IMG/VR virus record: IMGVR_UViG_3300032770_000002
Span: 124,001 to 188,000 of that record
Length of the DNA stretch: 64,000 nt
Reading direction: 5' to 3' (one strand)
How positions within the stretch are numbered: position 1 is the stretch's first letter; each line of letters starts with the position of its first letter. This document shows, one piece after another, positions 20,252-54,933 of this stretch. The notes under the pieces are model-generated. The model had not been told where the DNA came from. It saw only the letters and a list, made by a program, of their open reading frames with translations, and did no database searches. The translations under genes were made by a program, and so were the position numbers.

Positions 20252-21376
20252 ATGATACCGCCTGATTGGGTTCCGACGGTCATTGAAGTGGATTCGCTCA
20301 ACTCCCTTGAGCGGCTCTTGACGCCGCGCCGCTATGGGACCGTGCCGGGTGGCAACTACGGAAACACCAACGTTTTTGCCCACGACCTCGCCTACTGCGT
20401 TTCATCATCGCTGGCCGCCTTTCAAAACAGCGGCAAGCTCATGTGGGGACAGACCAACACCATGCACATTGCGTTTGACTTGGCCCGCAATCGCATGCCA
20501 TATTACTTCATCGATGGCCAGCTTGCTCGGGCCATTGCCGCAACAGCCGTTCCAAAGGACATGTCATTCGGCGAGATTCAGTGGCCGCTCAACGCATTGA
20601 CGTTCGCCTATCCGCTCGATTTCATGCGTGAACTGACTGGCTACAACGTTGACATCGGATTTGTCTCAGGCGCGATCTGGCCGCACAGCGGCATCACTAA
20701 ACCGCCCATTGAAATCTGCCCTGAGTTGATCGCTTTCAGCGTTCCTGCATTCCAGGTCGACGAGCCGCGAATGGCCGTGACGTTCGTTGACCACCGTGAC
20801 TTCGTCGTCCAAAATTTCCTGGCCGCGTCTTATCATGCGTCACACGAACTTTCGTCCCCAATTTCGGACATCGACACGATTGAATACCTTCAGTGGAAAT
20901 TTAATAGCGGGCTTGAGACCACGATGAACTTGCCGGTTGCTGACGAGCAAGTCGTCAGCCGTAAAGTCGTGGCGCTCTTCATGAAGACGCTGCTTGTCAT
21001 CTCGGCCCTTGAGCCACGCTATGTCGAGCGTGAGGCGAAGCTGCGCGACCCAATCGTCAAACGCGGGGTTCACAAGCCAGCGCTGTGGCGCCCAAACTTT
21101 ATTGGGCGGGCGTTTACGCTTCCAAAGCACACGCCGGTTGGAACACACGCGACGCCCATCTACCACGTTCGTCGGCGGCACGTCGTTCGCCAGGCCATTG
21201 GCCCACGGGACAAGCTCGTCCACGTCTCGTCACTGCCGCGCAAAGCTGACGGAAGGACCGATTGGGACGCGGTCACCGACGAGCAGAAGGCCGCGTTTTG
21301 GAAGTGCCATGAGAACCGTTGGATCGAGGAACAATGGCTCGGCGTAAAGGAGGACGATGCCAATATTCCTTCTTGA
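20252..21376 (+). CDS. hypothetical phage protein with C-terminal HxRRxHxxRQxxG...WI motif
   Basis: PIYHVRRRHVVRQAIG...RWIEEQWLG; ATG 7 nt after the -10 box. Confidence 0.75.
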   Translation: MIPPDWVPTVIEVDSLNSLERLLTPRRYGTVPGGNYGNTNVFAHDLAYCVSSSLAAFQNSGKLMWGQTNTMHIAFDLARNRMPYYFIDGQLARAIAATAVPKDMSFGEIQWPLNALTFAYPLDFMRELTGYNVDIGFVSGAIWPHSGITKPPIEICPELIAFSVPAFQVDEPRMAVTFVDHRDFVVQNFLAASYHASHELSSPISDIDTIEYLQWKFNSGLETTMNLPVADEQVVSRKVVALFMKTLLVISALEPRYVEREAKLRDPIVKRGVHKPALWRPNFIGRAFTLPKHTPVGTHATPIYHVRRRHVVRQAIGPRDKLVHVSSLPRKADGRTDWDAVTDEQKAAFWKCHENRWIEEQWLGVKEDDANIPS

Positions 21377-22001
21377 TAATGACGGCTCGCGCTCTGGCTG
21401 CCTATACGAGCCACGTGTCTCGACAAACAAGTGGGTTGAGACCCTGGCGCCGAGGCGTGGCTTTAAGACGTGGCGTTACAACTTTGTCGTCACTTGTGAG
21501 GTCTTGCTCGTGGACGGCCGGTCACGTCGGTTTCGTCTTTCACGCCCGTGCGATTCGGCCACGATTCGCCATGTAGACCCAACACTTCTGACAATCATGA
21601 CCGCCAACCGGTTAAAGGACCGCGTTCCACAGTCATTGGTCACTGAGGTTGAAAAACGGGCCAAGAAGTGGATTGATGCTCAGGCGATTAGGGCGGAATA
21701 CCTTCCACCAATTGAAAGACTCTACTCCGGCGTCAAGGCCTCCATGCTGTTTCCTCGAACGGCCGATCTTCGATTTATCGTCATCAACACCGACCTTGAC
21801 AACGACGTCTCGGCCGAGTTGATGGCTTCGTTTTTAAGCCAGCCTAGGGGCGCTAACGACAAGCTCATTCGAGTCATGTCTAATGAGCAGGCCGTCACGT
21901 CGATCTACTACATCGTCACGCCAGACGAACTTGTTGAGCTCAAGCGGACGATTACAGATTGCAACCGCCAACGGGTTTCAAGTCTTCTCGACCGTTCTTA
22001 G
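21357..22001 (+). CDS. modular-array protein (D+B)
   Basis: VLLVDGRSRRF...EVEKRAKKWID; IYYIVTPDELVELKR...RVSSLLD. Confidence 0.75.
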   Translation: MPIFLLDNDGSRSGCLYEPRVSTNKWVETLAPRRGFKTWRYNFVVTCEVLLVDGRSRRFRLSRPCDSATIRHVDPTLLTIMTANRLKDRVPQSLVTEVEKRAKKWIDAQAIRAEYLPPIERLYSGVKASMLFPRTADLRFIVINTDLDNDVSAELMASFLSQPRGANDKLIRVMSNEQAVTSIYYIVTPDELVELKRTITDCNRQRVSSLLDRS

Positions 22002-22005
22002 CTTC

Positions 22006-22206
22006 ATGGGACCTCATGACGCGATTTTGCGCCGATTTGCTGAGGCCAAGCCGACTGCCATTGAGAAACTAGAGCAGATCGTGAGCTTGGCTAAAGAGGC
22101 GATGCCTGGCCTTGAGCTGCAGGACCAGCTTGACCTTTGGGCCGCGATGGCCAGCATTGATGAGATTGCTGCCCGCGCGCAGCAGAAAAGTGAGAAGGTC
22201 GAGTGA
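22006..22206 (+). CDS. small hypothetical protein
   Basis: MGPHDAILRRF...; GTGA coupling to the next gene. Confidence 0.55.
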   Translation: MGPHDAILRRFAEAKPTAIEKLEQIVSLAKEAMPGLELQDQLDLWAAMASIDEIAARAQQKSEKVE

Positions 22207-22982
22207 AGGACAACTTCAGGTGCCCAGACGACCTTTACGTCGACGTTGAGGGCGTGCTTGGTGTGCGCCCACAAAAATCGGCGCAAAACTTCGACCCACT
22301 CTCACAGGAGACACAAACTGGGTATAAAAATGTCCTCCACCGGGCGCACATTTCTTGCAAAAACCAATTGTGGTCAAGTGTGCGTAATGGTGGGCAGCCA
22401 ATTAGGTATCGCCTTGCGTGGAATTACTTGGACAACAATGAACCCGTGGCCTTTATTGATATGGTTGAGATTCGACGCATGAACTTTGTCCACAAAGACG
22501 GCACGCCTTATGACATCCGCCCACTTGAGGCCAAGTTCTTGCGGACGCAGATTGACAAGTTGCCAGAGAGTCGAGCTCAGCAGGTCATTGAGATGGCGTA
22601 TTATTCGCTCCACGATCACCCACCGAGTGAGCAGTGGGTCAAGGACAACAACGTGGACGTCGTCCTGACGAAACACGTCCCGATATGGGACATTGCGGCG
22701 ACGAACGTGCACCACCTGTTTCATGGCATGAAGTGGACTGACTCGTCACGCTACGATGCCACTGACAACCTGCTGGCGTTTCTCAACACGAAGGAGGGTG
22801 ACGAGACGTTCGTCCGAGTTCGAATCATTCACCCTGACACCCTCGCCCTTGTGAATCGAGCTGGATTATCGAGCGGGCTGACTGGCATCTACTACGTCTT
22901 GGCAAAGCCTGAACAGCTTGAAAAACTCAGGCGCGAGATGATCAAGACCCAAGGGATGAAGGTCAAGAAGGCCCTCAAGTGA
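22203..22982 (+). CDS. modular-array protein (C+B)
   Basis: HKDGTPYDIRPL and IYYVLAKPEQLEKLRR. Confidence 0.8.
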   Translation: MKDNFRCPDDLYVDVEGVLGVRPQKSAQNFDPLSQETQTGYKNVLHRAHISCKNQLWSSVRNGGQPIRYRLAWNYLDNNEPVAFIDMVEIRRMNFVHKDGTPYDIRPLEAKFLRTQIDKLPESRAQQVIEMAYYSLHDHPPSEQWVKDNNVDVVLTKHVPIWDIAATNVHHLFHGMKWTDSSRYDATDNLLAFLNTKEGDETFVRVRIIHPDTLALVNRAGLSSGLTGIYYVLAKPEQLEKLRREMIKTQGMKVKKALK

Positions 22983-23653
22983 ACGCGCGCCAGACAATTG
23001 ACGAGATGGCCCACATGATCTTGGGGCGGCGCAAGAAGCCAACTGTCACCGACATCAAGGTGGGTGTTGATGTTTATTCAACGCTTCCCGCGTTGAAGGC
23101 TTTCGCCGTGGCCGTGCTGTCAAATGGCCAGTTTAAACACTTTGAAGTTACAGAACCAACCGATGCCGATGATACAGCCATGGTCCACGCAGCTAGGGCC
23201 GTCAGCGGGGGTGATTCTTTCTATGCTACTTTTCCAATGACCCAGCTTGAGGTAAGGCTTCGCGAAAAGAACTGGGCAAAACTCCAGTCAATGCGTGAGG
23301 AAGTTGTGCGCCAGGCCAAGGCCTGGGTTTACGACAATGAGCGTGAAATCAAGTATGGAAAGCTCAAGCGCCCGCAGTCGATAAAGCTCGACTACGACGC
23401 TGCCCCGCTCGTCAAGGGATTTCGGTTCATTCGCTTCGCCAAGGGCTCACGCAAGGGGATGGACAGTGTCTTGGCTTTGACCCAAAGCGCCGCGCCAGGG
23501 GAGTCCGTGCTCAAGGTCGAAGGGAGTGACATGACCCACACGGGTCTGCGATACGTGTATTACGTCCTGCTCACCCCTGAGGAACGCCAAGAGCTTGAGC
23601 GTCGGCGCATCCAGGTTGAACGGGAGCGCATTGGAGGCATCCTCGGCCAATGA
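22979..23653 (+). CDS. modular-array protein (D+B)
   Basis: NARQTIDE leader; AVLSNGQFKHF...VVRQAKAWV; VYYVLLTPEERQELERR...RIGGILG. Confidence 0.8.
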   Translation: MNARQTIDEMAHMILGRRKKPTVTDIKVGVDVYSTLPALKAFAVAVLSNGQFKHFEVTEPTDADDTAMVHAARAVSGGDSFYATFPMTQLEVRLREKNWAKLQSMREEVVRQAKAWVYDNEREIKYGKLKRPQSIKLDYDAAPLVKGFRFIRFAKGSRKGMDSVLALTQSAAPGESVLKVEGSDMTHTGLRYVYYVLLTPEERQELERRRIQVERERIGGILGQ

Positions 23654-24426
23654 ACGCGAAGGACGTCATCGAGGCCAGGTTTAAACACCGGCCACACCCA
23701 GGCCTTTGCATCAAGGTGACGCTGAGCATTGGCAAGGCACCACCCAAGTTTAGTCAGCCATTTCACCTGATCGTTCCAGTTCCAGCCCGAGTTCCATTTG
23801 ACAGCGTTGAAGAGTGGTGGGATGGCACTGAATCGCCAGCGGGCATAGAGCTGTGGGACATGATGCAACAGCAGCTTCCAAAATTCTCAAAAAACTTGGA
23901 AAGATACGGCCTAGTAAGAAATTGGCGCTACGCCATCATGAGGAACGGGAAGAGGATCAAGTTGAAGGGCCGCTCACCGAACCTTCAACTAGAGGAGCCC
24001 TATGTCGTTGCTTATGTCCACAGGAACGGCAAGCCCTACGACATTCGCCCATTTATGCGTGACCGCGTCTCAGGCCTGCTCGGTGAGTCACGTCCACACC
24101 CTGGACTTTGTGTTCAAATCGACATTGACGTCTATCGCTATGATGCAACATCGACCGTCCATGAGCCAAAGGTAATGACGATAGTGGTGCCAGTTCCAGA
24201 CGGGGTTCCTTTCGACGACATTCAATACTGGCTTAGGCAGAAGGAAAGGCCTGGTTCATTTGTGACGTGGTGGCCATATATCGAAGCGCAACACCACATC
24301 GACAAAAACACGGTCAGCGCCATTGTTTACCCAGGTGGAATTGCCGGCTACGTTCACGCTGACGGAACACCTTACGACGTCCGCCCATTTTTCGGTGATC
24401 GCGTGAAAGGCATACTTGACAAATGA
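23650..24426 (+). CDS. modular-array protein (C+C)
   Basis: Two RPHPGLC...H(R/A)(N/D)G(K/T)PYD(I/V)RPF..DRV.G(L/I)L units. Confidence 0.85.
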   Translation: MNAKDVIEARFKHRPHPGLCIKVTLSIGKAPPKFSQPFHLIVPVPARVPFDSVEEWWDGTESPAGIELWDMMQQQLPKFSKNLERYGLVRNWRYAIMRNGKRIKLKGRSPNLQLEEPYVVAYVHRNGKPYDIRPFMRDRVSGLLGESRPHPGLCVQIDIDVYRYDATSTVHEPKVMTIVVPVPDGVPFDDIQYWLRQKERPGSFVTWWPYIEAQHHIDKNTVSAIVYPGGIAGYVHADGTPYDVRPFFGDRVKGILDK

Positions 24427-24854
24427 AGGCCAGACAACTCATTGACGCTAAGCTCAACGAGCCACACTACAACAGCCCTGAGGAAGTTCGGCTGGCCCGC
24501 GTGACGTTCAACGTCTCCATCGAGAATGTTGAGGGTGAAGTGACCCGCAAGATGGGGCCGTTTATGGTTGACGTTCACCTCGATCCTGGGGAACTTGAGG
24601 CCAAAGGGTTGACACTGGCCAGCAAGCGTTTCTGGCAAGGTAATGGGGAGTGGAGACTGTGGAAAGAGTTCAGGGGGCAGCATCAAAAGGATTATACTGT
24701 GATCGGTGCGTTGATCGCCGATCATTATCTCGTCGACGCGGACGTCGTTGACGTCAAGATCGTTGACTACTTCGGCAACCCGGTCGACCTGCAGAACGTC
24801 GCTCGTGGTTTCATCAAGGGGCAGCTTGACAAGCCAAGTGAAAACGAGGAGTAG
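24423..24854 (+). CDS. modular-array protein (divergent C)
   Basis: KARQLID leader; DYFGNPVDLQ...FIKGQLDK. Confidence 0.7.
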   Translation: MKARQLIDAKLNEPHYNSPEEVRLARVTFNVSIENVEGEVTRKMGPFMVDVHLDPGELEAKGLTLASKRFWQGNGEWRLWKEFRGQHQKDYTVIGALIADHYLVDADVVDVKIVDYFGNPVDLQNVARGFIKGQLDKPSENEE

Positions 24855-26277
24855 CCATCACATCGCTGAGGAGGACGTCCCACACCCTGGGCTGTGCGTC
24901 AAGCTCACCCTGGGCGTCGTCGTGAAGCGTCGCCTTGACTATGAGCTTGGTTATCGTGAGTGGGAAGTCTACGGGGAACAGGCCGCATCGCCAGTCATCG
25001 TGCCGATTCCAGATAATTGGCCGTGGCGAGCCGCCGATGAGTGGGTCTATGCCCTTATGGATCATGAGGTCGACCTGGTCGACATCGTCCAGAAACAGAG
25101 CCCGGAGACGTGGAAAAAGGTCGAGGAGTGGCGGTATGAACTGACTCCACGCTATGACGTCAAGGAGGAGTTTGAGGTTGTCGAGATTCTTGGGTGGTGC
25201 CACGCTGATGGCACGCCTTACGACATCCGCCCGCTTGAAGCTGGCCGAGTTCGAGACATTCTTGGCGAAGCTGAAGATGAGTGGGACCGCTGCCTTCAAG
25301 ACGCGCGCAAGCTCTACGTGGAAATAAAGAAGCTGTGGCATGAAAGTGGCTATTACCACAACAAACTTGGCGAAAAGGTTCTCAGTGACGTCGAGTTTCA
25401 CTACGGCCAGGACGTCGCCAACTGGTTGAGGTATTTTATGGGCGTCCACCCACGGCAGGTTGGGTGGACACTTCAGCGTTGGAGCCCTGAGATCATTGCC
25501 GACCACATGGACCCGGTCAATGGGCAGGAACACCCCGAAGCCTTGGCCACGCTTCGAACGCCTGAGTTCAGGCACTTTTTGAGTCGGGCCATCGCAAGGG
25601 CAAACGTCAGGTCAATGCTTGGTGGTGGCACGCTTGAGTCACTTGACGATTTTCGCCCACACCCTGACCTCCATGTCGTGGTTAAGTTACGCATCTATGG
25701 CCCGCCTTGGGCTCATGACGAGGCCACTGCTCCTGATAATCGTGGCTATAACTTGGAAGAGTGGGATGACGCCATCGTGACCGTTCCAGTTCCTGAGCAC
25801 TGTTCATTTGATGAGATTGAAAATTGGGTCTTTCAGCGCGATACGAGTGAAGGGTCGATTATGTGGTGGCACGAGTTTAAAGCCCAATCGCCTGAGGAGG
25901 CCCAGCGCATTGAAACCGAAAAAGGTTTACACTTAGGCGTGGCTGTGGTAGGGGTAATAGGGTATCAACATGGCGATGGGCGGCCATACGACATTCGCCC
26001 ATTCCTTAGGGATCGCGTCGGCAGATTGTTAAACACAGACGAAGATGTTATGTCAAATGCAAGAAAAGTCATCGATGAGTTCACGAGTGCGTCTGGCGTT
26101 CCTGGCCGTGACATGGGGCCGGCGCCGCTTGTCGCTCCACCGCCAGTGCGCCCACGCCCGACGACGCCAACGCGTCCGGCTCAGCCGACTAAACCTGGCG
26201 TGAGGCCATGGCACCCGACGCCTCGCCCTGGAGTAAACCCACGCCCCAAAGCCAGGTTTCGCAGGACCGGTGTCTAG
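24838..26277 (+). CDS. modular-array polyprotein (C+A+C plus Pro-rich tail)
   Basis: GTG 24838; PHPGLC, HADGTPYDIRPL, FHYGQDVANWL..TPEFRHF, HGDGRPYDIRPF, then MSNARKVIDE and a Pro-rich tail. Confidence 0.8.
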   Translation: MKTRSSHHIAEEDVPHPGLCVKLTLGVVVKRRLDYELGYREWEVYGEQAASPVIVPIPDNWPWRAADEWVYALMDHEVDLVDIVQKQSPETWKKVEEWRYELTPRYDVKEEFEVVEILGWCHADGTPYDIRPLEAGRVRDILGEAEDEWDRCLQDARKLYVEIKKLWHESGYYHNKLGEKVLSDVEFHYGQDVANWLRYFMGVHPRQVGWTLQRWSPEIIADHMDPVNGQEHPEALATLRTPEFRHFLSRAIARANVRSMLGGGTLESLDDFRPHPDLHVVVKLRIYGPPWAHDEATAPDNRGYNLEEWDDAIVTVPVPEHCSFDEIENWVFQRDTSEGSIMWWHEFKAQSPEEAQRIETEKGLHLGVAVVGVIGYQHGDGRPYDIRPFLRDRVGRLLNTDEDVMSNARKVIDEFTSASGVPGRDMGPAPLVAPPPVRPRPTTPTRPAQPTKPGVRPWHPTPRPGVNPRPKARFRRTGV

Positions 26278-26717
26278 TGTCTAGAATAATCAGCCACGAG
26301 ACGGCACCACCTGATAAATTCTTCAGGTGGTAAATTCCATTTTATCACATTGATGACTTTGTGAACCCACTGGACATTTCCAATAATGTAACCTTTTGAA
26401 GAATCAATACGGTCAAGAGATGCAGTATGGCCGTTGTCACTACATTGCATCCATTGTCTACTAGATTTGGCCTGTCTCCAGTGTCTAGAAAATGTCAGTT
26501 CAACTCCGGTTAAAGCACAACATTTATGCTGTTTAAGAAAAAGTTCCCAGCCATATTTAATTGTGATAGAAAACTTACGATTGGTTTTTCTGGCGGTCCG
26601 TCTTAATCCATTCCAATAAGCTAATGAAATATCGCCGTATCCTTGCCATGTTTGCCATTTCTTTGGACAACACGCTCGTCTTTGGAGTGGAGTATGACGA
26701 TATGGCGTTCGTAGCAT
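26274..26717 (-). mobile_element. HNH homing endonuclease inserted antisense in the array
   Basis: CALTGVEL...ASLDRIDSSKGYIIGNVQWVHKVIN.IK; AT-rich; opposite strand to all neighbours. Confidence 0.85.
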
Positions 26718-26732
26718 TAGGAAGAGAACTTC

Positions 26733-27212
26733 ATGGCTGAGGAACTTCCATTTGCTGTTAAGGTCGACGTGCCGGGCGAGATTGAGGGCCAGTATTTTGT
26801 CGCCCACTGCGTCGCGACGATCATGCCACGTGCGGCCTCGCCGGCACATGTGAATTCACCGACATGGGTGAATGCACCGACGTGGCCTGAGCTTAGGAAG
26901 TGGGTCGAAAATTTTTCATCCATGACCGGGTTTCCTGGCCGAATAGGCCAGATTGATTCTGTCGTGTTTGACAGCGTTCGTGACCAGTTTGCGGAAGCGG
27001 CTTCTCAACTTGGAAAGAGGTCAGGACCCCTGCCGAAAAACTACACCATCGATTGGAAAAACGCCACGTTCACGTGGCTCGATCGAAACCAAGAACCGTT
27101 TGACACGAGGCGACTTGACGGCGAGTATGTCCGCCAACAACTTGACAAGAGCCTACAACATGAAAGTTCGTCCAAGTCAGTGATTGACGATGTTTTTCGC
27201 CGTTACCGATGA
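26733..27212 (+). CDS. modular-array protein (divergent C)
   Basis: WLDRNQEPFDTRRL..YVRQQLDK; ends HES-SSKSVIDD. Confidence 0.75.
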   Translation: MAEELPFAVKVDVPGEIEGQYFVAHCVATIMPRAASPAHVNSPTWVNAPTWPELRKWVENFSSMTGFPGRIGQIDSVVFDSVRDQFAEAASQLGKRSGPLPKNYTIDWKNATFTWLDRNQEPFDTRRLDGEYVRQQLDKSLQHESSSKSVIDDVFRRYR

Positions 27213-27229
27213 AGTGGCCATTTTTGGCA

Positions 27230-28444
27230 ATGACTGCGCGTGAAATTATTGACGAAGTGGCTGGGTTGCACCTCAAGGCTACGGTCAGAGTTCCCGCGTC
27301 GGTGACTGGGAGCGTGACGGTCATTGGCACTGGGGAGATTCCAACCGGGGTCGTGCCGTGGAACTTACTACGCGAGTGGTCGCATGGCGAGATGAGCTAC
27401 AGCGCTGATTTTGCGGACTTTATTCGTCCACGCATCGCAAACAAGCTTGTCGACGCCGTGGTCAACAACTTGATCGACAAGCACCCGTTCATCATGCGAT
27501 TAGGTTCGCGGCCAAGGCGGGCTAAAATCATCGAGTGGATTCAACGCCGGATCACGTGGCCGCTTGCTCACCCGGAGAATCACCCGCCGCCAGAATCGGT
27601 CAAGTTTGAGTGGATCAACCCTGACGGCACACCCTATGACTTGCGGCCATTGGAGGCCGATTTTACACGCGGGTTGCTCGGCGAAGGTGGAGGTGGCTAC
27701 GCGGACCTATATGGCGACCTGTGTGGTGAGACTGATGTGACTTTTAGGCTGTGTCAACAGGACCAACGAGACAAGTTTCGGACGATCAATGTCAAGTTGC
27801 CAGTTAACAGACACGTCGATTGGCTTTGGGCCGAGAAGTGGGCCACTGACGCCATTTGGTATGCCTTTGTTTATGGCGAGCCGTATAATAACCTTGGCAA
27901 CATGATTCTGTCTGACGAAGACCGAGCTCTTCTTTCACCCAAGCCTGGAGTCAATGTTAAATTTCACAGCATGGGCAAAATCCGGTGGGTTCATGCCGAT
28001 GGCACGCCTTACGACACCCAGCCGCTTTATCGCCGGTTCATTGGGCATAAGCTCAGCGAGGAGACGACGAAAATTGACCACGTAAAACTGTGGGTTGACG
28101 TCTATCTGGGCGACACACGGCCAACTTCGCCCAATGAAAGGTCAGTTGAGACCATTGAAGCCACGATCCCTGTGGGCGTTGGTGTGCGCAAGCTAAGCAA
28201 ATACGCTGAATCACATCGCTACCTGACGCCGAACGTCATCATGGACAGGAGATGGGATTCTGGCTGGTGGTTGCCAGAGTTCGTTAATGAGCTCGAGTCG
28301 ATGAACCGAGATGAACTGTTCCATCATGGGGTCTGGTTTGGGCTGCGTAAGATTGAGTATTATGACGAGCACAACGAGTTGGTCGACCCACACATCGTTG
28401 ACCGGCTAGGCGTCAGTTACATGCTCGACAAGAACGCTACTTAA
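27230..28444 (+). CDS. modular-array polyprotein (C+C+divergent C)
   Basis: TAREIIDE leader; NPDGTPYDLRPL, HADGTPYDTQPL, YYDEHNELVDP; alternative start 27209. Confidence 0.8.
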   Translation: MTAREIIDEVAGLHLKATVRVPASVTGSVTVIGTGEIPTGVVPWNLLREWSHGEMSYSADFADFIRPRIANKLVDAVVNNLIDKHPFIMRLGSRPRRAKIIEWIQRRITWPLAHPENHPPPESVKFEWINPDGTPYDLRPLEADFTRGLLGEGGGGYADLYGDLCGETDVTFRLCQQDQRDKFRTINVKLPVNRHVDWLWAEKWATDAIWYAFVYGEPYNNLGNMILSDEDRALLSPKPGVNVKFHSMGKIRWVHADGTPYDTQPLYRRFIGHKLSEETTKIDHVKLWVDVYLGDTRPTSPNERSVETIEATIPVGVGVRKLSKYAESHRYLTPNVIMDRRWDSGWWLPEFVNELESMNRDELFHHGVWFGLRKIEYYDEHNELVDPHIVDRLGVSYMLDKNAT

Positions 28445-28448
28445 GTCA

Positions 28449-29720
28449 ATGAGCGAGAATGCGCGCAGGCTAGTTGATTCTGTCTTTGAGATGGCGCTAG
28501 ACCCAGGCCAATATCCGAACTTTGTTCACCCGGAGCGTCGGCGACAGTTCACGCGGGGTGAACACCCGATGGCCAAAAATCCGGCCTACCCACCCTTTAC
28601 GCCACAGCCAGGGCAGAAGGAAGTCAACTGGGAAGAGGTCGTGGGCGGCGGCCAATACAGGGACACCCTTGCGCGGATCCAGACGTTCTTCAATCGGCTT
28701 CATGGCAACGAACCTGGCGATCAGACTTACACATTTCAGACCATCGCCCAGTCCATGTTTCAGGCCGTTGAAGACGCGATGGGGATGGAGAAGCCCTATC
28801 GCCGCGCGCTTGAAAAGCTGGCCATCGACTTGCTGCTTGAGCAACCTGAGTTTAAGGCGCTGAAGGAGCCATATGAAAAGGGTGAGTTCAAGATCGACGC
28901 TAAGCTTGGCGCGCAGGGTGACCTTCGCCTCGTCGCCTTGTCGTCGGATGAAGTAACGCCGACGCAGCAGGAGGAATTTGCGGCCTTCCAAGAGATGGCC
29001 GGCTTTGACGACGAGGTGGCCAAGCGGCGCGTCCTTAACGCCTTGATTGCTGGCGGAGCGGTCTCGAAGAACTACGCCTACCAACTGATCAACTCGAAGA
29101 TTGAGAAGATCTCACCCGGCTTGCCGACGCTCTACGGGATGGCGATGGCCGGGACTGAGTTGGGCTATTTTGCGTTGCCAGACGAGGCCGTTGGTCAGGC
29201 CGCTCGCACACCCGGGGCGGCGGGTGGTTCAATGGAACTTGACATGTCCGACGTGCCAACCATCAAGGTCAGGGCAATGATCTTCCCGATGCTCGTCCAA
29301 GAGCTGGCCAAGGGCTTTCTTGAATTGGCCGCCTATGAAGGCTTGCCAAAGGACCCTGCCGTTGCCAAGGGCGTCATTGCCAAAGCTGACCTAGCTGACG
29401 AGGAGTCGTGGGCGATGATCATGGGCCGCGGGCTGTGGATGCGGTTTGTCAACGCCATCGGTGCGGATGATGACGAGGTGACACTGCACCTCTACAACCG
29501 GATTGCCGCGTTGCCGGCGGCTGAGTTCAACCAGACCATGCGGACCATTCAGGCCGGTGGGCCAGAAGCCGAGCGCCTGCTGCGTGAGATGGCCAAGTCC
29601 ATTCGTGATGACATTGAGGCTGAAAAGCACGGGACGCTTGAGGAACCCGAAGGTGGCGAAGGTGGCGAGGAGGGTGGCGACGAGTTTGGCATTGACCCAG
29701 ACGCGTGGAAAAATGGATGA
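28449..29720 (+). CDS. large-phage hypothetical protein, acidic C-tail
   Basis: ENARRLVD leader; KRRVLNALIAGG, PTIKVRAMIFPMLVQELAKG; resembles a family I recall from large uncultured phages. Confidence 0.8.
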   Translation: MSENARRLVDSVFEMALDPGQYPNFVHPERRRQFTRGEHPMAKNPAYPPFTPQPGQKEVNWEEVVGGGQYRDTLARIQTFFNRLHGNEPGDQTYTFQTIAQSMFQAVEDAMGMEKPYRRALEKLAIDLLLEQPEFKALKEPYEKGEFKIDAKLGAQGDLRLVALSSDEVTPTQQEEFAAFQEMAGFDDEVAKRRVLNALIAGGAVSKNYAYQLINSKIEKISPGLPTLYGMAMAGTELGYFALPDEAVGQAARTPGAAGGSMELDMSDVPTIKVRAMIFPMLVQELAKGFLELAAYEGLPKDPAVAKGVIAKADLADEESWAMIMGRGLWMRFVNAIGADDDEVTLHLYNRIAALPAAEFNQTMRTIQAGGPEAERLLREMAKSIRDDIEAEKHGTLEEPEGGEGGEEGGDEFGIDPDAWKNG

Positions 29721-30087: not shown

Positions 30088-30606
30088 ATGTTCGACGTCA
30101 CAACGCTGAAAATTGGGCCGCTTCCAGAGGCGCTTGTCTCGGCTTCCATTGACTTCGCCACTCAATTTAGCGTGAAGATGCACGAGACCATGATGCCGGC
30201 GTCTGTCTTCTTCACCAAGCAGGGACGATTTGGGACGGTCAAAATTCCGGTAATCCAAGACCCCAGTGACAAAAATGTGGTCTCGCAAGTCATTCGTGAT
30301 TTCAGGCGTGATTGCGATGCCGTCACTTTTGTCGCTGAATCGTGGATAGTCGAGCGGCCAGTAAACAGGAAAGACCCAAACAAGGAAGACGTCAAGAAGA
30401 TGGCGGACAAGATGTTTCCGACTGGCATCATCCACGACGAGCCGGATCGTAAGGAGGTCGTCATGCTATGCATCTACGTCAAGTCAAGGACACTCATTCT
30501 TACCGCGCCCATCGAACGCACCCCAGACAAGGTCAGTCTTGGCGATTGGGAGGTGACTCAGGACTCCGCAGTCGATTCTCGACTCGCAGGGAGGTTTATA
30601 GATTGA
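30088..30606 (+). CDS. hypothetical protein
   Basis: 172-aa ORF 6 nt after the promoter. Confidence 0.75.
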   Translation: MFDVTTLKIGPLPEALVSASIDFATQFSVKMHETMMPASVFFTKQGRFGTVKIPVIQDPSDKNVVSQVIRDFRRDCDAVTFVAESWIVERPVNRKDPNKEDVKKMADKMFPTGIIHDEPDRKEVVMLCIYVKSRTLILTAPIERTPDKVSLGDWEVTQDSAVDSRLAGRFID

Positions 30607-31244
30607 TGACATTCGGTGCCAAAGCGTTGATTGACTCGCTTCTTTACGAGATGCCACGCCACCTGACTAGGAAGCCTGAGCATGACCGGCCGCGGATAAC
30701 GTATACGACTGAGTTGGACGGGTGGAACGGCAACTTCTTGTGCAAGGCGACTGCAATCCTTTCGAGCGGTGAGACGAAGGTCTTTAAGACGACCGTTCCA
30801 ATGACGCCTGAACAACGTGAAACGTGCAAGACACTCAATTTCGACCAGGCCAAGAGGCAGTATCCAAAGGAGACTAAGCAAGTTTATGACGAGGCCGTCT
30901 CGGCCGCGCGCGAGTGGATTGAAAAGAATGACGAGCCATACGTCATGATGGACCAGTCACTCAACTACGACCTCATCGGTGACGACCTGCTGTGGGTTCT
31001 CAAGGGTTTCCGATACGTTGTTGGAAATAAAGGGGTGTTGGGTGGCGGTCCGGCAGCGTCCTTAGCGGCCTTGGCCAACATGATGAAGCCAGGAGACAAG
31101 GTGGTCCAGGTGACCACCCGCGACCACCCACAGGATTTTCGCTTAACCTATTTCGTCGTTGTCAACCCTGCCGAGGGTGAGGAACTCCACCGTCGGGCCA
31201 TTGAGGCCAAGCGCAAAGAGGTCAGTTCATACCTTGAAACATGA
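30606..31244 (+). CDS. modular-array protein (D+B)
   Basis: GAKALID leader; AILSSGETKVF...AVSAAREWIEKN; YFVVVNPAEGEELHRR. Confidence 0.8.
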   Translation: MTFGAKALIDSLLYEMPRHLTRKPEHDRPRITYTTELDGWNGNFLCKATAILSSGETKVFKTTVPMTPEQRETCKTLNFDQAKRQYPKETKQVYDEAVSAAREWIEKNDEPYVMMDQSLNYDLIGDDLLWVLKGFRYVVGNKGVLGGGPAASLAALANMMKPGDKVVQVTTRDHPQDFRLTYFVVVNPAEGEELHRRAIEAKRKEVSSYLET

Positions 31245-33594: not shown

Positions 33595-36500
33595 ATGGCA
33601 ATTGAAGTCAGGTTCGCCGGAGAACGTGACGCCGCAAACCCCAACATCATTCACTATGTTGGAAATGCGGGCACAATCGCTGGCACATACTACAGCGACC
33701 TGACGCTCGACTTCAACCTGGTCACGGGTGATTGGACGGCGAATGTTCCGCCAGGTTTTCCGGCTGGAGTCCAGGTCTCGGCATCGTGGATTGACCTCGA
33801 CCCGCACGTCGTTCGGCCAGAGCCAACGACCCGCCTTCAAAGCGCCATTGGACGTCCTGAGAGCGACATCATCAGCCCTGATTCACCGCGTCCTTGGCAC
33901 ACTGAACAACCTGGACTGGACGCCTATTGGAAGCTGGAAGAGTCGATAGGGCACGTTCGCGTCGACTCTGAGGATGGGCACGACCTCACCCCAGACACCG
34001 GCTATTTTGGGAACCAAGTGTCGAGTGACATTGGCATTGTTGGCACCTGCGCCTATGGGTCATCAACGTCGTATGGCCTCCTGATCAATGACGCCTTCAA
34101 CATCTCCAACAAGTCGTTTTCACTGACATTCTGGGCCAAGCAGTTTCCAGCGGCTCAACCTTTTTATCAGTGGGTCCTGTCGCAGTGCCAAACGGCCGAC
34201 CCAGTCCATGGCTTGGGCAATGACATTGAGTTTGGGATCTACAACTACTACCCATTTGGCAACTTTGAGTGGCACGTCTTCCAGAATGATGGAACGGACA
34301 TCTTGCTAGATTCTGGGGCTGGTGCGTTTGTCACCAACGTCTGGTTTTTCTTCGCGTGCGGTTACGATGACGTCAACAAGGTCAGTTGGATTTCCGTCAA
34401 TGGAGCCCCGAGGATCACGACCCCATGCAACAGCGCTCGCTCGCACACGCACACAGACTTTAGGCTGTTTTGGGTAAGTGGTTCGTCGAACTACCTTAAC
34501 ATCCCAAACTGCTTTTACGGGTGGATTGATGAGGCGGCCTTCTGGAGCCGCAACATGACCGATGACGAGATTTCGGCTTACTACAACGGCACCCGTAAGT
34601 TCGATGAGTTCGAGACAATCACCGTCTATGGAACGGTGCCAGGGACGGTTGACTTCGAGTTGTTTGATGACGCGCCATGGCACCGGTCGCTGACGGGCGA
34701 TCGTGAGCGTCGGCTCATGACGGACATGGACCTCACTGGACCGTCCTGTCACGCCATCGCCACGCTGACCATTCCAACGGTCCTCGATCAAAGCAACGTC
34801 CCATACACCTTGTCCACAGTTAAGGGACTGACTAGCGCGCTTCCACTTCAAACTTCAGCCGCAGTTAGCGACGAGTTTGGCGACCCATGCTTCGCCATCG
34901 CGGTTCCTGGGACTGTCGCCGGGACGGTCATTTCAAACGACCCGATCTTAACGCCAACGGGCCTCGTCTATGGCGTGCTCGTCAGTGACCCACAGTCATT
35001 TTTTACCCCCACGTTTCGTGATGGGCTGTGGGAATGGTGGCCATTTAACGAGCACCCTGAGTCCAACCTGACCGTCTTTGAGCGGGTGTGGGGTGGTTCG
35101 ACTGACCTTGACGGTTTCCTTGACACGGATCGCACGCTCATTGAGGACTGGGGGTGGGCGCTTCACGTTCCGCGTGAGCGGTCAATTACGCTTCCATTCC
35201 ACGAAGCCACAGCTTTTGGCTCGATGACATTGACCGAGCGATTTCAGCTCGTCAACGACCTAGGCGACGGCACGTCCACACTCTTTGCGATTGACAGTCT
35301 GCGAGTCACCGTTGAGAGCAGCTCAGGGAGCTACACGCTTCGAGTTGAGGTTTGGAGCGGCGGCACGTGGACCACTGAGGCCTCGACGAGCGTCAGCCTT
35401 GGCGTTGACTACTACCTGGCCATCGTCTTTGACGGGTCGGTAGTTTCACGCTTCTTGCTCTACGCCGAAACTGACGTTGACCCGGCGCCGACGTTCAGTG
35501 GCGGTCCATTCGCCGACACGGCCGACCTGACTGGGTCGATTGAGGCGTCCATTTCCTGCGACCTCCTGACTTTCTACGTCTACGACCTTCGAATTTGGAC
35601 AAGTGAGAAGACGGACACCGAGTTGAAGGCGATGCGGCGCCGAGTCATCCACGAGGCTCCGCAAGCTCGGTGGCCTTCGGTCGTCCCAACGGAGCAGGGG
35701 TCTGGGTATGCCTTGCTGACGTGGGCGCGAAGTGGCTTTGTCTACCCTGGCGGGCCGAGTCCCACCATTGTTGGTGGCACGATGGCGACTTGGCTTCTTG
35801 AAAAGGAGAGCGTCAGCATCCTCCTCAAGGCGGCCCGCGTCTTTGACGACATTCGAGTTGAAGACCTAGGGTTCGGCGGTGGCCAAGCCATCGTTGAGCC
35901 GTGGACCTTGGGCTCGCAGTTTTCACTGGTCCTCGCTGACTCAAGGGCCGTGGTCGCGTCGTCGATGGGCGTCATTGGTGACAACCCAATTTGGGAGGGT
36001 GAGTTTGGGCCTTGGGAACCGGAGGCAAACCGCAACATCACGGCACACCGGGCATGGTTCAGTGGCTCTGGGAAGTCGTGGGACATCGAGGTTAAGTCGA
36101 CTATCGGTGGCCCAGCTCTCGTCGCGATTGAGGAAGACTTGGGCGGCATGGGGAGCGCACTCGTTGACGCGGGCCATGAGGCCCTTGAGGTCATGACAAC
36201 CGGGTCCATCGTCACGACTGGCACGGTGGACCACGGGGCCAACATGTTCCTCTACAGCCCAACGAGTGTTGTCGTGGACATTGCGGGCATCGACGAGTGG
36301 GTTGACCAGAACTCGTTTGGGCTAGGGCAGAACCCTCCCGTTGCGGCCATCGACTCACGTGGCAAGCTGACGTTTTACGTGGCGACGGCCCTTTCAGCAG
36401 GACCTTACCGGTTGACGCTCGACGCCGGGAACATTGGGCAGGTGGCTAGCGACTTTGTTGGGCTGCAAGTCGACGTCACCATCGCCCAAAGTTCAACTTA

Positions 36501-38964: not shown

Positions 38965-39452
38965 TGCAAGTCTTAGGCACAGTCATTGCAGCCGAAATCA
39001 CCAGCGGCGACACGGACAACACCTTTAGCCTAGGCAACCTCAATTATTTCGCGGGCGGTCACAAGACCGCGGCCACGACGGCCGACCGTGACGCCATCAC
39101 GACTGAGCGCCGAATGGAGGGCATGACGTGCTGGGTCGTCGACATCCAGCAGCTCTACAGGCTTGTCGGTGGGATCACCAATAGCAACTGGGTGCTCGAG
39201 GTTACACCGGCCGTTTCACCAGTCAGTGGGTCTTGGCCACTCGGAAATGGCGATGACTCTGGCAGCGTCACCGGACTTGGCCTTGGATTCACCCCATCAC
39301 GCGTCATACTTTCCATTTCCAGGCCATCAGGCGGGTTGATGATCTTTGCCAATGACAATTCAGGGACGTTGACCACGGACGGTTTTGACTTTGAGTTGAG
39401 CGGCATGACTGACTCAACAGACTACGTGTTGAACTACGTCATCTTTCCATGA
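38964..39452 (+). CDS. virion structural protein
   Basis: TADRDAITTERRMEGMTCWV..YRLVGGITNSNW motif typical of phage virion proteins; TAATG coupling. Confidence 0.75.
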   Translation: MQVLGTVIAAEITSGDTDNTFSLGNLNYFAGGHKTAATTADRDAITTERRMEGMTCWVVDIQQLYRLVGGITNSNWVLEVTPAVSPVSGSWPLGNGDDSGSVTGLGLGFTPSRVILSISRPSGGLMIFANDNSGTLTTDGFDFELSGMTDSTDYVLNYVIFP

Positions 39453-42400
39453 AAACAAACCGTCTCATCGCGCTCTCAGCGATTGTCGCCTTGGCCTTGT
39501 TGACCATTGCCGCTGCCTCGAGAACCCCAATTCTTCGTGGGTTTCTTCAGAGTGACTTTGATGGAAACAATCTGTCAATCACCAACCTGGCGAGTGCTTC
39601 AGCCCAAAATCTCCTCTCGGCAAATGCCTTAATCGGGGAGCAAATTGGCAACGTCAGCGGAACCAACTCCATGGTCACGCTCAGGAGCACGCTGCCAGTT
39701 CCGCGTCACGTTCCACAAGGGATGTTTCAACTGTGGTATCTCCATGGTCCAGACGTTGGCTGGACTAACAGCCTGGCTAATGACACCACTTACACGATTA
39801 CAAACGTCGTTGCCTGGATGATAGGGGACGGCTTGCGTGACGCCGGGTTCAACTGGATCATGATCAGTGTCGGGTGCAACTCACCTTACCGCGACAGCTC
39901 TGGGGCCATCCTTTGGAACACGAACCTGTTTCCGGAAGGAATGCAGATTGCCGTGGACTACTGCCACAGCAACGGGTTTTACGTGTGCATCTACACTGAA
40001 CCGACCGCGTATCTCTACAACTCTGACTTTACGACTTACAATGGAACGTTCGTTGGGACGCCATTTGAGAAGATCCACACGGACGTGACGAACTTTGCGG
40101 CGATCGGGTTTGACGCCATCGAGGTCGATTTTCAGGGGTCATTCACCACGCCTAGGCAAAACCCTGGAATGCTGGTTGACTGCACCACCAACGGCGTGTC
40201 CGCTTACTTTCAACTGCTTCACCAGGAGGTCGCAAAGTGTGGCCGCCCAATGGAGATCAAGAGTGCCGGCATTCCACAATATCCTGATCCGTGGATGCCC
40301 GCAAGCATCAACGAGTGGGACCAGTTGGGATACTTCACCAACCAGGTCTTGATGTGGTCGAATGGACCCGCTACAGGGACGATAAACGTGGGCGACGACA
40401 CTCCATGGTCGGAGTATATTCGGTTCGACTTGGACATGCTGCGTTCAGACCTCATTGGACCAGGCCATCACATCTTCCGCAACAACATGCGGCTCAACAC
40501 GACGGTCATCCATGACCGAACCATCATGGCCTTTTCGGCCATCGAGTGCTCGGACCAGGTGCTCAACGAGATAGACTACCCGTGGATCTCCAGGCCGCAG
40601 CAGAATGCTGACTTGAGGAACAAAGCCTGGAGGTTAATCTGCAAAGACCCGGGTGTCATTCAAGGCCAGGTGTTGTGGCGCACAAACTGGGTTGACGTGG
40701 ACCAACGGCCGCTTGTTGACACGACCTACGGTCTAGCGGAAAAAGCCATCCTTCTTTACAATCGCAAAACTAACGCCGCGCAGGACATTACGTGTTACCT
40801 GCCAGTGCTTGGTTACGATACCAATCCAGTCGTCGTCCTTGACGTCTTCAACAACACCAACGTGACCATAACTGGTGGAACTTTAAAGGCTACGGCTGTT
40901 CCAACAAATAGCGCGATCCTCTTCCTCGCCTACATTCCACGGCCACTTGACCAGGTTGAAAGTGTTGACGCTGTTGGGAACATCGCCGTGTCAACAAGCA
41001 TTAGCGTGACGAACACGACGACGAAAAATGGTATCACGCTCTCATCCACTTCACTGCGTGGGACGAACGCCACAGCGGCACGATACTCTTTTGGCCTCGG
41101 CTTTGACACTAGCATTGGCTACGGCACGTTGCAGTTGGCCGGCTATGGCGGTTCAACTTGGCAGGCTTCGACGCTTTTTGGCACCACAAATCGCACGGTT
41201 GTTAGCGTGCAACGTCTCGATGGCCGAGTTGACCAAGGAAGCATTGGCCAGCTTTTCACCGTGGGCAAAGACGCGCCTCCTTATGACGGCACGGCGACTT
41301 TTGGAACATTTGAAATTGGAGGAAGACTGGAGCCTGACCCAACAAACAGCTTCCAGGTGGACAACGCCCAGATGAATCGAGCTTTTTTGGTCAACACAAA
41401 CGGGAATACGTTTGCTGGAGGCAACTTGACTGTGACCTCGAACCTTACGTCTAGGGTGTTGACGGTAACCAATCCATTGACTGGCCTTTACACCTACGTC
41501 GCCGGGGATGGCATCTTCGCGTCCAACGCGCAGACCAAGGCTTCGATGAATTACACCAATGGCATCCTTTCGACCACGAACCCGCTTGTCACGAACGGGA
41601 TTTTCGCGGCATATGCCGCCACGGCTTTTAACGGGATGGGGATCTCGCTCGGTGCCGGTCAATACGGGACTCCCCCGAGCGGCTTTGCATGGAACTTTGC
41701 TTCGCGTGGCCACCTAGTGCAGATGGTTTCTGGGTGGCAGGACGGAACCGTGGAACTTGGCAACATAGGCCAGGGGTTCATCTGGGCATCCGGCGCTCCT
41801 CCATACGACGGCAGCGCTGGATACGGAACAGTGGCAGTTGGCGGGTGGACACCTGACCCGACAAACTCATTTCAGGTGGACAACCACCAGCGGTATGGAT
41901 CATTCCAAGTCGGAACCAATGGCGTGACTTACGCCAACGGCGGCATCCGACCGGGTGTGTTCACCGTCGCCACTCTGCCGACAGCATCGGCCTACCAGGG
42001 AGTTGAAGTTTACTGCTCTGACGTGTTGACGCCTGCTGGGACAGGTGAGCGCGTCGTCTCCGATGGCACCAACTGGCGCACGATGCGAGACAATATCATT
42101 GCCACCACGACGCTTTCGGCTTATGTCTTCAATTGTGCTGAAGCGAGAGTCAACCGTATCACGAGCAAATCAACTATATACTGGAATGAAATCATCCTTC
42201 CGAGCACCGGTGGGTCAATGCCGCGCAATGTTCAAGCCTCTGGAACTGGCGCTGGCCAGGGTGAAGGCTCGTCCCGCAGCGACCTTGGCCGGTTTGGCTA
42301 CATCAGCACTGGCACGACGACGACAGGAGCGTATAAGGTGTGGACGGGAGGTGAACCAGGACTGAGCACAGATGAAGCGTATGGATTTGGTGGCAATTAC

Positions 42401-54916: not shown

Positions 54917-54927
54917 TGTGGTATATT
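54896..54927 (+). promoter_or_regulatory. putative early sigma70-type promoter
   Basis: TTTACA, 17 bp, TGG-TATATT. Confidence 0.75.
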
Positions 54928-54933
54928 AACGGC

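What the first reader, a model, noticed from the sequence alone, without database searches (positions are those of the whole stretch)
22491..28400. Module C: ten copies of a (D/N)G(T/K/R)PYD(I/V/L/T)(R/Q)P motif under purifying selection
Seen: clear copies at about 22491, 24019, 24355, 25201, 25969, 27617 and 27992, and divergent ones at about 24766, 27084 and 28360. Two copies (22497 GACGGCACGCCTTATGACATCCGCCCACTTGAG and 25207 GATGGCACGCCTTACGACATCCGCCCGCTTGAA) differ only at synonymous third positions. The module middles (W-rich, acidic) vary widely. This is a conserved frame with a hypervariable interior, as expected for a binding scaffold, and the DNA similarity could seed recombination.
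Basis: partly seen in the sequence, partly recalled or inferred. Interest (0 to 1): 0.6.

Follow-up and report, generated by a model that had tools for sequence, protein, structure and literature searches.

The report
New repeated protein domain, jumbo phage
Ten old, diverged copies of a previously undescribed small protein domain sit in six neighbouring genes of a 230-kb wetland phage; the copies are real and conserved by selection, but they are not hypervariable or recombining, and their function is still only inferred.

Summary
Ten modules of 110-140 residues, each ending in a (D/N)G(T/K/R)PYD(I/V/L/T)(R/Q)P-like turn, lie in six co-oriented, tightly packed genes (22203-28444) of a 230,253-bp jumbo phage from a wetland metagenome. 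Seven copies are clear, F and D are supported by family profiles, and G3 is marginal. In the motif, synonymous sites are near saturation (pS 0.62) and non-synonymous sites are not (pN 0.12).

Each window module has its own orthologue in other phages and no two window modules are sisters, so the duplications are old. Module interiors are 40-54% identical between orthologues, so they are not hypervariable. The longest exact DNA match between copies is 19 nt. No reverse transcriptase, no template/variable repeat pair and no recombinant joints were found.

The domain has no Pfam, PHROG, NCBIfam or PDB sequence match. A confident AlphaFold2 model (pLDDT 90.5) has no structural neighbour (best Z 3.8). 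About 19 foreign protein clusters carry it, in arrays of 1-5 modules, always just upstream of a conserved zincin-like protein (H) and fused to it in three clusters.

Best reading: a lineage-specific, non-enzymatic protein-binding module family that acts with H. Function is inferred, not shown. In passing: at least 17 genes of this phage share an N-terminal M-x-A-R-x-x-I-D tag.

The parts
22203..22982 (+). Gene A (259 aa). N-terminal module C copy A1 (22203-22559, motif at 22497-22523) fused to a 'B-type' C-terminal domain (22563-22979).
   Evidence: (A1 E 1e-10 without its orthologue)
22979..23653 (+). Gene B (224 aa). Not module C. It is a B-type paralogue inside the array, carries the N-terminal tag, and ends in the same R-x-R-(V/I)-x-x-x-L helix as module C.
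23650..24426 (+). Gene C (258 aa). N-terminal tag helix plus two modules: C1 (23689-24090) and C2 (24091-24423). Motifs at 24025 and 24361.
   Evidence: (C2 model, pLDDT 90.5)
24423..24854 (+). Gene D (143 aa). Tag helix plus one divergent module (24462-24833). Degenerate motif FGNPVDLQN at 24771.
   Evidence: (E 2e-6)
24838..26277 (+). Gene E (479 aa from GTG at 24838). Module E1 (24877-25275), a 125-aa insert (25276-25647), module E2 (25648-26037), an internal tag-like helix (from 26050) and a proline-rich basic tail (to 26274).
   Evidence: (P0002 is 479 aa)
26274..26849 (-). Free-standing HNH endonuclease gene on the opposite strand, interrupting the array between E and F. Its likely start is at 26717. 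Not part of the module family.
   Evidence: phrog_3322, 8e-20; absent at this place in relatives
26733..27212 (+). Gene F (159 aa). One module (26733-27149, motif NQEPFDTRR at 27087) followed by a C-terminal tag-like helix.
   Evidence: (E 4e-12)
27230..28444 (+). Gene G (404 aa from ATG at 27230; the ORF opens at 27209). Tag helix plus three modules: G1 (27263-27682), G2 (27695-28060) and G3 (28064-28432, the most divergent, motif HNELVDPHI at 28370).
   Evidence: (orthologue P0008 starts at the same Met)
28449..29720 (+). Gene H (423 aa). A conserved helical, zincin-like protein that always follows the array and is fused to module C in three foreign clusters. It has an N-terminal tag helix and an acidic C-terminal tail.

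Best explanation
Shown:
- The ten copies are ten instances of one previously undescribed protein domain of about 110-140 residues.
- The AlphaFold2 model gives a beta-hairpin, two helices, a second long strand or hairpin, the conserved H-x-D-G-T-P-Y-D-(I/V)-R-P turn, and a C-terminal helix ending R-x-x-V-x-x-x-L.
- The copies are spread over six adjacent, co-oriented genes with overlapping stop and start codons, in a 230-kb jumbo phage from a wetland.
- The array is an old tandem expansion. Each module has its own orthologue in related phages. Modules have been joined into, or split out of, multi-module proteins by loss or gain of stop codons. Each copy is now under purifying selection.
- The array is not a diversity-generating or actively recombining system.

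Inferred:
- The motif is the most conserved stretch because it forms the turn and helix cap that fasten the last helix to the sheet, and probably a common contact face.
- The three variable-length loops give each paralogue its own stable specificity.
- The proteins are soluble, non-enzymatic protein-binding modules made from the same polycistronic block as the downstream zincin-like protein H, and they work with H.
- The likely setting is host takeover or replication-associated assembly, not the virion.
For: Copies and significance.

Fold: (pLDDT 90.5, pTM 0.80). No match in Pfam, PHROGs or NCBIfam, in PDB sequences, or by fold in PDB, BFVD and the ESM Atlas (best Z 3.8, TM 0.50 or less).

Family elsewhere: 24 hits among 1.84 billion representatives, 5 of them the window's own, with 1-5 modules per protein.

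Old duplications and selection: saturated pS against pN 0.12 in the motif. Every window module lies nearer to a foreign module than to any window module, nine of them sister to a single foreign orthologue, and the label 'window' needs 10 changes on the tree. Orthologue interiors are 40-54% identical in seven of nine pairs.

Link to H: the array lies directly upstream of H in the window, L007, L013, L014 and an ENA contig. Module-H fusions occur in P0026, P0029 and P0036. Relatives whose H is about 50% identical or less lack module C.

No catalytic signature: the only conserved polar residues are those of the turn.
Against: - No experiment or known homologue bears on function.
- The G+H complex prediction gave no answer.
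- The H fold match is modest (Z 6.2) and its HExxH is replaced by QELAK, so the role of H is itself unknown.
- Adjacency and fusion show a functional link, not binding.
- Downstream genes encode Laminin_G/PKD giants, which would also fit a virion role.
- The shared N-terminal tag and a T4 gp21-like protease fit a packaged-protein reading.
- G3 membership is marginal.
Confidence: 0.55

Rival explanations
1. One reading: a conserved frame carrying a hypervariable interior that is being diversified, with the shared DNA motif seeding recombination between copies.
For: The motif DNA is the only repeat shared by the copies. Loops vary widely in length and sequence between paralogues. The number of modules and the gene boundaries differ between related phages.
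Against: Orthologous interiors are conserved (40-54% in seven of nine pairs). No two window modules are sisters. pS between copies is saturated. The longest exact identity is 19 nt. The genome has no reverse transcriptase. The spanning contig shows no joints (weak because only contigs were available).
Confidence: 0.06
2. T4 internal-protein-like cargo. The module C proteins, and other genes with the M-x-A-R-x-x-I-D start, are targeted into the prohead by this N-terminal peptide. Some are trimmed by the gp21-like protease, and they are injected with the DNA to act on the host.
For: The strict tag pattern hits 18 times, all on the + strand, 16 with 60 or more residues downstream; shuffles give a mean of 1.8 and 0.17. 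The DNA pattern hits 17 forward and 0 reverse. B, C, D, G and H all start with the tag. The genome encodes a Peptidase_S77 (T4 gp21) homologue. One tagged protein has a DMP19-like DNA-mimic domain. The T4 capsid targeting sequence is a 10-residue N-terminal peptide shared by otherwise unrelated, fast-evolving proteins (PMC9026906).
Against: By my reading of the starts listed, only about 9 of 23 tags carry an (I/L/V)-x-E site as T4 cleavage would need. H and its tag helix sit between the DNA polymerase and ligase genes in distant relatives. Genes A and F lack the tag at their start. There are no virion data.
Confidence: 0.2
3. Cohesin/dockerin-like system. The conserved motif-plus-last-helix face of each module is a receptor for the N-terminal tag helix, so module arrays gather tagged proteins or chain themselves head to tail.
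For: The most conserved part of every module is the C-terminal 30 residues. Unrelated B-type domains share only that last helix and the tag. In fused proteins the tag helix follows the module's last helix within 5-15 residues. The tag helix of H is not packed on H in its model (pLDDT 43-49). Both the tag excess and module C are absent from five distant relatives.
Against: No docking evidence exists; the complex job gave no answer. Distant H homologues keep a similar helix without any module C. The co-occurrence rests on one clade.
Confidence: 0.1
4. Virion surface, fibre or decoration modules that belong with the Laminin_G/PKD giant proteins encoded downstream.
For: In the window and in L007 the array and H are followed by Laminin_G_3 and PKD proteins of 1400-1800 residues. 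Tandem small domains are common in phage decoration and adhesin proteins (own knowledge).
Against: The predicted fold is mixed alpha/beta and not Ig-like, with no structural match to phage structural proteins. In wider relatives H lies among replication genes.
Confidence: 0.07
5. Artefact: one long repetitive gene broken into pieces by assembly or sequencing errors.
For: Gene boundaries fall between modules, and E needs a GTG start that overlaps D by 17 nt.
Against: Junctions are ATGA or GTGA overlaps with a conserved N-terminal tag after each. The same starts occur in independent metagenomes (P0008, P0013, P0015). A second study holds identical pieces.
Confidence: 0.02

Closest known systems
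T4-type internal protein (IP) loci with a capsid targeting sequence
   Same: A cluster of lineage-specific genes that diverge greatly in their bodies while sharing a short conserved N-terminal peptide. The genome also has a gp21-type prohead protease (PMC9026906).
   Different: There is no sequence similarity to IPI, IPII or IPIII. The tag sequence differs and most tags lack the (L/I)-x-E cleavage site. The proteins here are multi-domain and larger. Packaging has not been shown.
Paralogous gene families of jumbo phages, such as the phiKZ and SPN3US inner-body or head protein paralogues (own knowledge)
   Same: Tandemly arranged, strongly diverged paralogues restricted to one phage lineage, with no database annotation.
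   Different: No homology was detected. Here the repeat unit is a domain that is shuffled between genes by fusion and fission.
Cohesin-dockerin scaffoldins (analogy only)
   Same: Tandem arrays of one small domain, together with a short tag present on many otherwise unrelated proteins of the same genome.
   Different: A different predicted fold (cohesins are all-beta; own knowledge). No binding is shown. This is a cytoplasmic phage setting.
Diversity-generating retroelement targets and other hypervariable binding scaffolds
   Same: A conserved frame with variable loops.
   Different: No reverse transcriptase and no template/variable repeat pair. The loops are conserved between orthologues.
Zincin-like metallopeptidases (DUF885, M32, M3), for the partner protein H only
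   Same: The H model aligns to these folds over about 200 residues at Z 6.2-4.2. A beta-hairpin precedes the helix that would carry the active site.
   Different: HExxH is replaced by the conserved QELAK. Z is below the level that shows kinship. There is no Pfam hit.

Membership tests
Any described protein family (Pfam, PHROGs, NCBIfam, PDB) | A significant profile or sequence match | tested here: not met
   No hit for any module-bearing protein. The PDB profile search has a best E of 0.4. The Atlas feature search found nothing.
Any known fold | A structural neighbour with Z above 8, or TM above 0.5 over the domain | tested here: not met
   Foldseek on PDB gives a best E of 0.48, and on BFVD 0.066. 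VIA-align over 48,161 chains gives a best Z of 3.8 and the second look 3.1. The Atlas TM is 0.50 or less. A weak match does not prove a new fold.
DGR variable protein or hypervariable scaffold | A reverse transcriptase in the genome | tested here: not met
   PF00078 has no match in the 230-kb genome, while the control genomes do match.
DGR variable protein or hypervariable scaffold | A template/variable DNA repeat pair, and variability between close relatives concentrated in the binding loops | tested here: not met
   The only repeat is the 44-nt motif at 64-82% identity. Orthologue interiors are 40-54% identical in seven of nine pairs.
Recombining or concerted-evolution repeat array | Copies within a genome closer to each other than to copies in other genomes | tested here: not met
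   In the tree of 44 modules, the 10 window modules need 10 changes, and 9 pair with a foreign orthologue.
Recombining or concerted-evolution repeat array | Reads or contigs joining non-adjacent copies | tested here: inconclusive
   No joints were found in 2 runs, but only assembled contigs were available.
T4-type capsid-targeted internal proteins | A short N-terminal peptide shared by otherwise unrelated proteins | tested here: met
   18 strict hits, all on the + strand and almost all at ORF starts, against 1.8 in shuffles. The DNA pattern hits 17 forward, 0 reverse and 0 in controls.
T4-type capsid-targeted internal proteins | A gp21-family prohead protease in the genome | tested here: met
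   PF03420 scores 62 bits at G000:15694-16119.
T4-type capsid-targeted internal proteins | A protease site, (L/I)-x-E, closing the tag | tested here: inconclusive
   By my reading of the starts listed, about 9 of 23 tags have (I/L/V)-x-E at that place.
T4-type capsid-targeted internal proteins | Presence and processing in virions | not testable with these tools
   There is no isolate and no proteome.
Zincin metallopeptidase (protein H) | An HExxH metal-binding motif on the active-site helix | tested here: not met
   Residues 284-288 read QELAK, with Q284, E285 and K288 conserved in the 32-row H alignment.

The most novel reading that the evidence does not exclude
The module arrays and the N-terminal M-x-A-R-x-x-I-D helix, carried by at least 17 and perhaps about 28 genes of this phage, form a phage-encoded tag-and-receptor system of a new fold. 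It would work either as a cohesin/dockerin-like cytoplasmic scaffold or as a capsid-targeting system. The conserved DGTPYD-turn face would be the common docking site, and gene fusion and fission would rewire which cargo is tethered.
Probability: 0.12. Interest if true: 0.8.

Novelty: new variant of a known kind. Interest (0 to 1): 0.45.

Why it matters
Jumbo phages carry many unannotated paralogue families, and this one now has a clean definition. It has a domain boundary, a confident model with no structural neighbour, a conserved turn motif, about 19 foreign relatives, a fixed genomic partner (H), and a history of fusion and fission. That makes it a tractable target for structure determination and for asking how large phages build lineage-specific protein machinery.

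The by-product may matter more. A short N-terminal peptide is shared by at least 17 otherwise unrelated genes in a genome that also encodes a gp21-type protease. This looks like a protein-targeting signal and could be tested directly with reporter fusions if a host is found.

It also gives a worked counter-example. A conserved motif with variable 'middles' need not mean ongoing diversification or recombination.

Tried and rejected
- **Close phage relatives:** megablast and tblastn against GenBank phages found none.
- **IMG/VR scans:** the motif DNA pattern and H alone found nothing. The 10-row alignment was too variable for the search for related loci.
- **The search for homologous proteins with gene C:** it returned only gene C itself. 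The exhaustive profile search was needed.
- **hhalign of module C against H:** no relation.
- **hhalign of module C against B-type domains:** only the last 12 columns align, at probability 2.8%.
- **ESM Atlas searches by features:** nothing usable.
- **Complex prediction of H with G:** no answer, with scores of 0.51, 0.00 and 0.01. This is evidence neither for nor against binding.
- **Read laying on 5,991 bases, within the operators' limit:** both runs are kept as contigs only, so rare recombinant joints could not be seen.
- **Promoter and terminator scan:** nothing decisive.
- **Whole records behind L007, L009 and L010:** not held, so tag counts in close relatives could not be made.
- **A D/E frameshift:** considered and dropped, because a GTG at 24838 gives the 479-aa product that the gene callers also report.
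- **Literature searches:** no description of this family.
- **Other:** only genetic code 11 was used.
Full report
**Setting.** The window is bases 124001-188000 of a 230,253-bp virus record with direct terminal repeats. The record is identical to IMG contig Ga0335085_10000140. One wetland metagenome assembles it as a single 230,155-bp contig, and a second wetland study holds identical 151-159-nt pieces. GenBank phages hold no relative by megablast or tblastn. Recognisable genes include a ribonucleotide reductase, an amidoligase, an HNH endonuclease, Laminin_G/PKD giants and a T4 gp21-type prohead protease. This is an uncultivated jumbo phage. Only genetic code 11 was used.

**The observation.** The region 22203-28444 holds six + strand genes: A, C, D, E, F and G. 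An unrelated gene B lies between A and C, and an HNH gene lies on the minus strand between E and F.
- The stop and start codons of A/B, B/C and C/D overlap as GTGA or ATGA. E starts at a GTG 17 nt inside D. G most likely starts at 27230.
- The motif pattern occurs four times at the DNA level against none in 100 shuffles.
- It occurs eight times at the peptide level, always in the coding frame of these genes. Two more degenerate copies lie at 24771 and 28370.
- Cutting the proteins at the motif gives ten modules of 111-140 residues that align along their whole length.
- Profiles built without the tested copy, and without its orthologue, recover nine copies at E between 1e-19 and 2e-6. G3 reaches only 0.015.
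- A profile search of all six frames of the genome finds no eleventh copy.

**Selection and age.**
- In the nine motif codons of the seven clear copies, the synonymous difference is 0.62 per site and the non-synonymous difference 0.12. This confirms purifying selection on the peptide.
- Over whole modules pS is 0.62-0.87, which is saturated, and pN is 0.41-0.67. The copies are old.
- The only DNA repeat family is the 44-nt motif stretch at 64-82% identity. The longest exact match between any two modules is 19 nt.
- A maximum-likelihood tree of 44 modules from the window and from other metagenomes was built. Nine window modules are each sister to one foreign orthologue, most with strong support. 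C2 sits in a mixed clade. No two window modules are sisters.

All duplications therefore predate the split of these phages, and nothing has homogenised the copies since.

**Are the interiors hypervariable?** Between orthologous modules of different phages the interior is 40-54% identical in seven of nine pairs (30% and 38% in F and D). The C-terminal 32 residues are 60-72% identical in six pairs and 41-47% in A1, D and F. For scale, the closest homologues of protein H are about 57-62% identical to it.
- Each paralogue therefore keeps its own interior. It evolves somewhat faster than the frame but is not hypervariable.
- Length variation is confined to three places: after positions 22, 53 and 75 of C2. 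These are the first hairpin tip, the loop between the two helices, and the link to the second sheet element.
- The genome has no reverse transcriptase and no template/variable repeat pair.
- Laying public data on 5,991 bases showed no joints, but both runs are kept only as contigs, so this is weak.

**What the module is.**
- Pfam, PHROGs and NCBIfam give nothing.
- An exhaustive profile search of 1.84 billion representatives gives 24 proteins. Five are the window's own, and about 19 are foreign proteins with one to five modules each.
- With a 44-row alignment, AlphaFold2 models C2 at pLDDT 90.5 and pTM 0.80. The elements are strand 7-17, strand 27-34, helix 41-51, helix 61-68, strand 77-88, the motif turn at 89-97, and helix 98-110.
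- I infer that Gly and Pro shape the turn, Tyr packs into the core, and Asp-x-Arg-Pro caps the last helix. This would explain why the motif is the most conserved stretch.
- No structural neighbour was found. Foldseek gives a best E of 0.48 on PDB and 0.066 on BFVD. VIA-align gives a best Z of 3.8 over 48,161 chains and 3.1 on second look. The Atlas TM is 0.50 or less.
- No residue pattern suggests catalysis.

**Context and evolution of the array.**
- H, the 423-aa gene just downstream, has about 40 homologues at 41-62% identity, several on contigs of 200-250 kb.
- Where H is 57% or more identical, a module C array lies directly upstream. L007 has about eight modules in three genes, L013 at least six, L014 at least two, and an ENA contig has P0013, P0004, P0022 and P0008.
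- Where H is about 50% identical or less, the array is absent, and H lies between DnaB and DNA polymerase A on one side and an NAD ligase on the other.
- In three protein clusters (P0026, P0029, P0036) one or two modules are fused in frame to H.
- Orthologues differ in architecture. P0004 is E without its 125-aa insert. P0015 is C1 alone. P0013 is D with a second module. P0023 is A fused to B. The proline-rich tail of E is a separate gene in L013.

Fusion and fission at gene junctions have therefore been frequent, while the order of modules has been kept.

**Protein H.** Its model (pLDDT 82) is mostly helical. Its best structural matches are all zincin-type peptidases: DUF885, M32, M3 and ACE, at Z 6.2-4.2 over about 200 residues. 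The helix that should carry HExxH reads QELAK, with Q, E and K conserved. I take H to be a zincin-like protein that does not bind metal in the usual way. Its role is unknown. A complex prediction of H with G gave no answer.

**A second signal: the N-terminal tag.**
- Genes B, C, D, G and H start with M-(K/N/T)-A-R-x-x-I-D, and the same helix recurs inside fused proteins just after a module's last helix.
- Across the genome the strict pattern occurs 18 times, all on the + strand. Sixteen have at least 60 residues downstream, and almost all sit at ORF starts. Shuffles give a mean of 1.8 and 0.17.
- The DNA pattern hits 17 times forward, never in reverse, and never in the controls. Looser forms bring the number of tagged genes to about 28.
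- Codon third positions vary, so the constraint is on the peptide.
- Five distant jumbo relatives show only background counts and also lack module C.
- One tagged protein has a DMP19-like DNA-mimic domain.
- In the H model the tag helix is not packed on the body (pLDDT 43-49).
- The tag resembles in kind, though not in sequence, the T4 capsid targeting sequence (PMC9026906), and the phage has a gp21-type protease. By my reading of the starts, only about 9 of 23 tags carry an (I/L/V)-x-E site.

**Verdict.**
- The copies and their purifying selection are confirmed.
- The ideas of a hypervariable interior and of recombination seeded by the motif are not supported.
- The thing itself is a new domain family, possibly of a new fold. 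It forms an old, stable tandem array that is remodelled by gene fusion and fission and is tied to protein H.
- I commit, at modest confidence, to non-enzymatic protein-binding modules that act with H in the same expression block. The internal-protein and tag-receptor readings remain live rivals.

Noticed in passing
window 5105, 7277, 22979, 23650, 24423, 26050 (internal), 27230, 28449, 30606, 51431, 52325; also G000 72313-111389 and 190795: A genome-wide N-terminal tag, M-x-(A/S)-(R/K)-x-x-(I/L/V)-(D/E), sits at the start of at least 17 and perhaps about 28 + strand genes with otherwise unrelated bodies. It is far above chance and is absent from five distant jumbo relatives. It may be a targeting or docking peptide.
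   Followed up: partly
window 26274-26849 (-): A free-standing HNH endonuclease gene (phrog_3322, 8e-20) lies on the opposite strand between module genes E and F. Relatives have no room for it at that place, so it looks like a homing insertion.
   Followed up: partly
window 21357-22001, 22563-22979, 22979-23653, 30606-31244: A second paralogue family ('B-type', ending Y-Y-V-L-x-x-P-E-E...R-x-R-V-G-G-x-L) is interleaved with module C. By profile comparison it shares with module C only the tag helix and the last helix.
   Followed up: partly
window 25276-25647 and 26050-26274: Gene E carries a 125-aa helical insert that its orthologue P0004 lacks. It also has a conserved proline-rich, basic C-terminal tail preceded by an internal tag. 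That tail is a separate small gene in locus L013.
   Followed up: partly
window 28449-29720: Protein H has a zincin-like predicted fold (Z 6.2 to DUF885, M32 and M3 peptidases) with QELAK in place of HExxH, and an acidic tail ending in a conserved Trp. In distant relatives it lies between DNA polymerase A and NAD ligase.
   Followed up: partly
window 33595-38964 and 39449-42844: Two giant ORFs lie downstream. One is 1789 aa with Laminin_G_3 and weak PKD hits. The other is 1131 aa with a Melibiase_2-like stretch. They are probably adhesin or carbohydrate-active virion proteins.
   Followed up: no
G000:C1:190795-191952 (outside the window; L034): A tagged 386-aa protein has a DMP19-like DNA-mimic domain (PF14300, 29 bits, above the cut-off). 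It is a candidate anti-restriction or host-interference protein.
   Followed up: no
G000:C1:15694-16119 (outside the window; L025/L035): A T4 gp21-type prohead protease domain (Peptidase_S77, 62 bits) lies inside a 612-aa open frame.
   Followed up: no
window 23786-24337: A second wetland metagenome, from a different study, holds short contigs identical to this stretch. The same phage therefore occurs in more than one sample.
   Followed up: no
window 54781-56022 and 60575-63388: An amidoligase-family protein and a class I ribonucleotide reductase large subunit. These are ordinary auxiliary genes of large phages.
   Followed up: no
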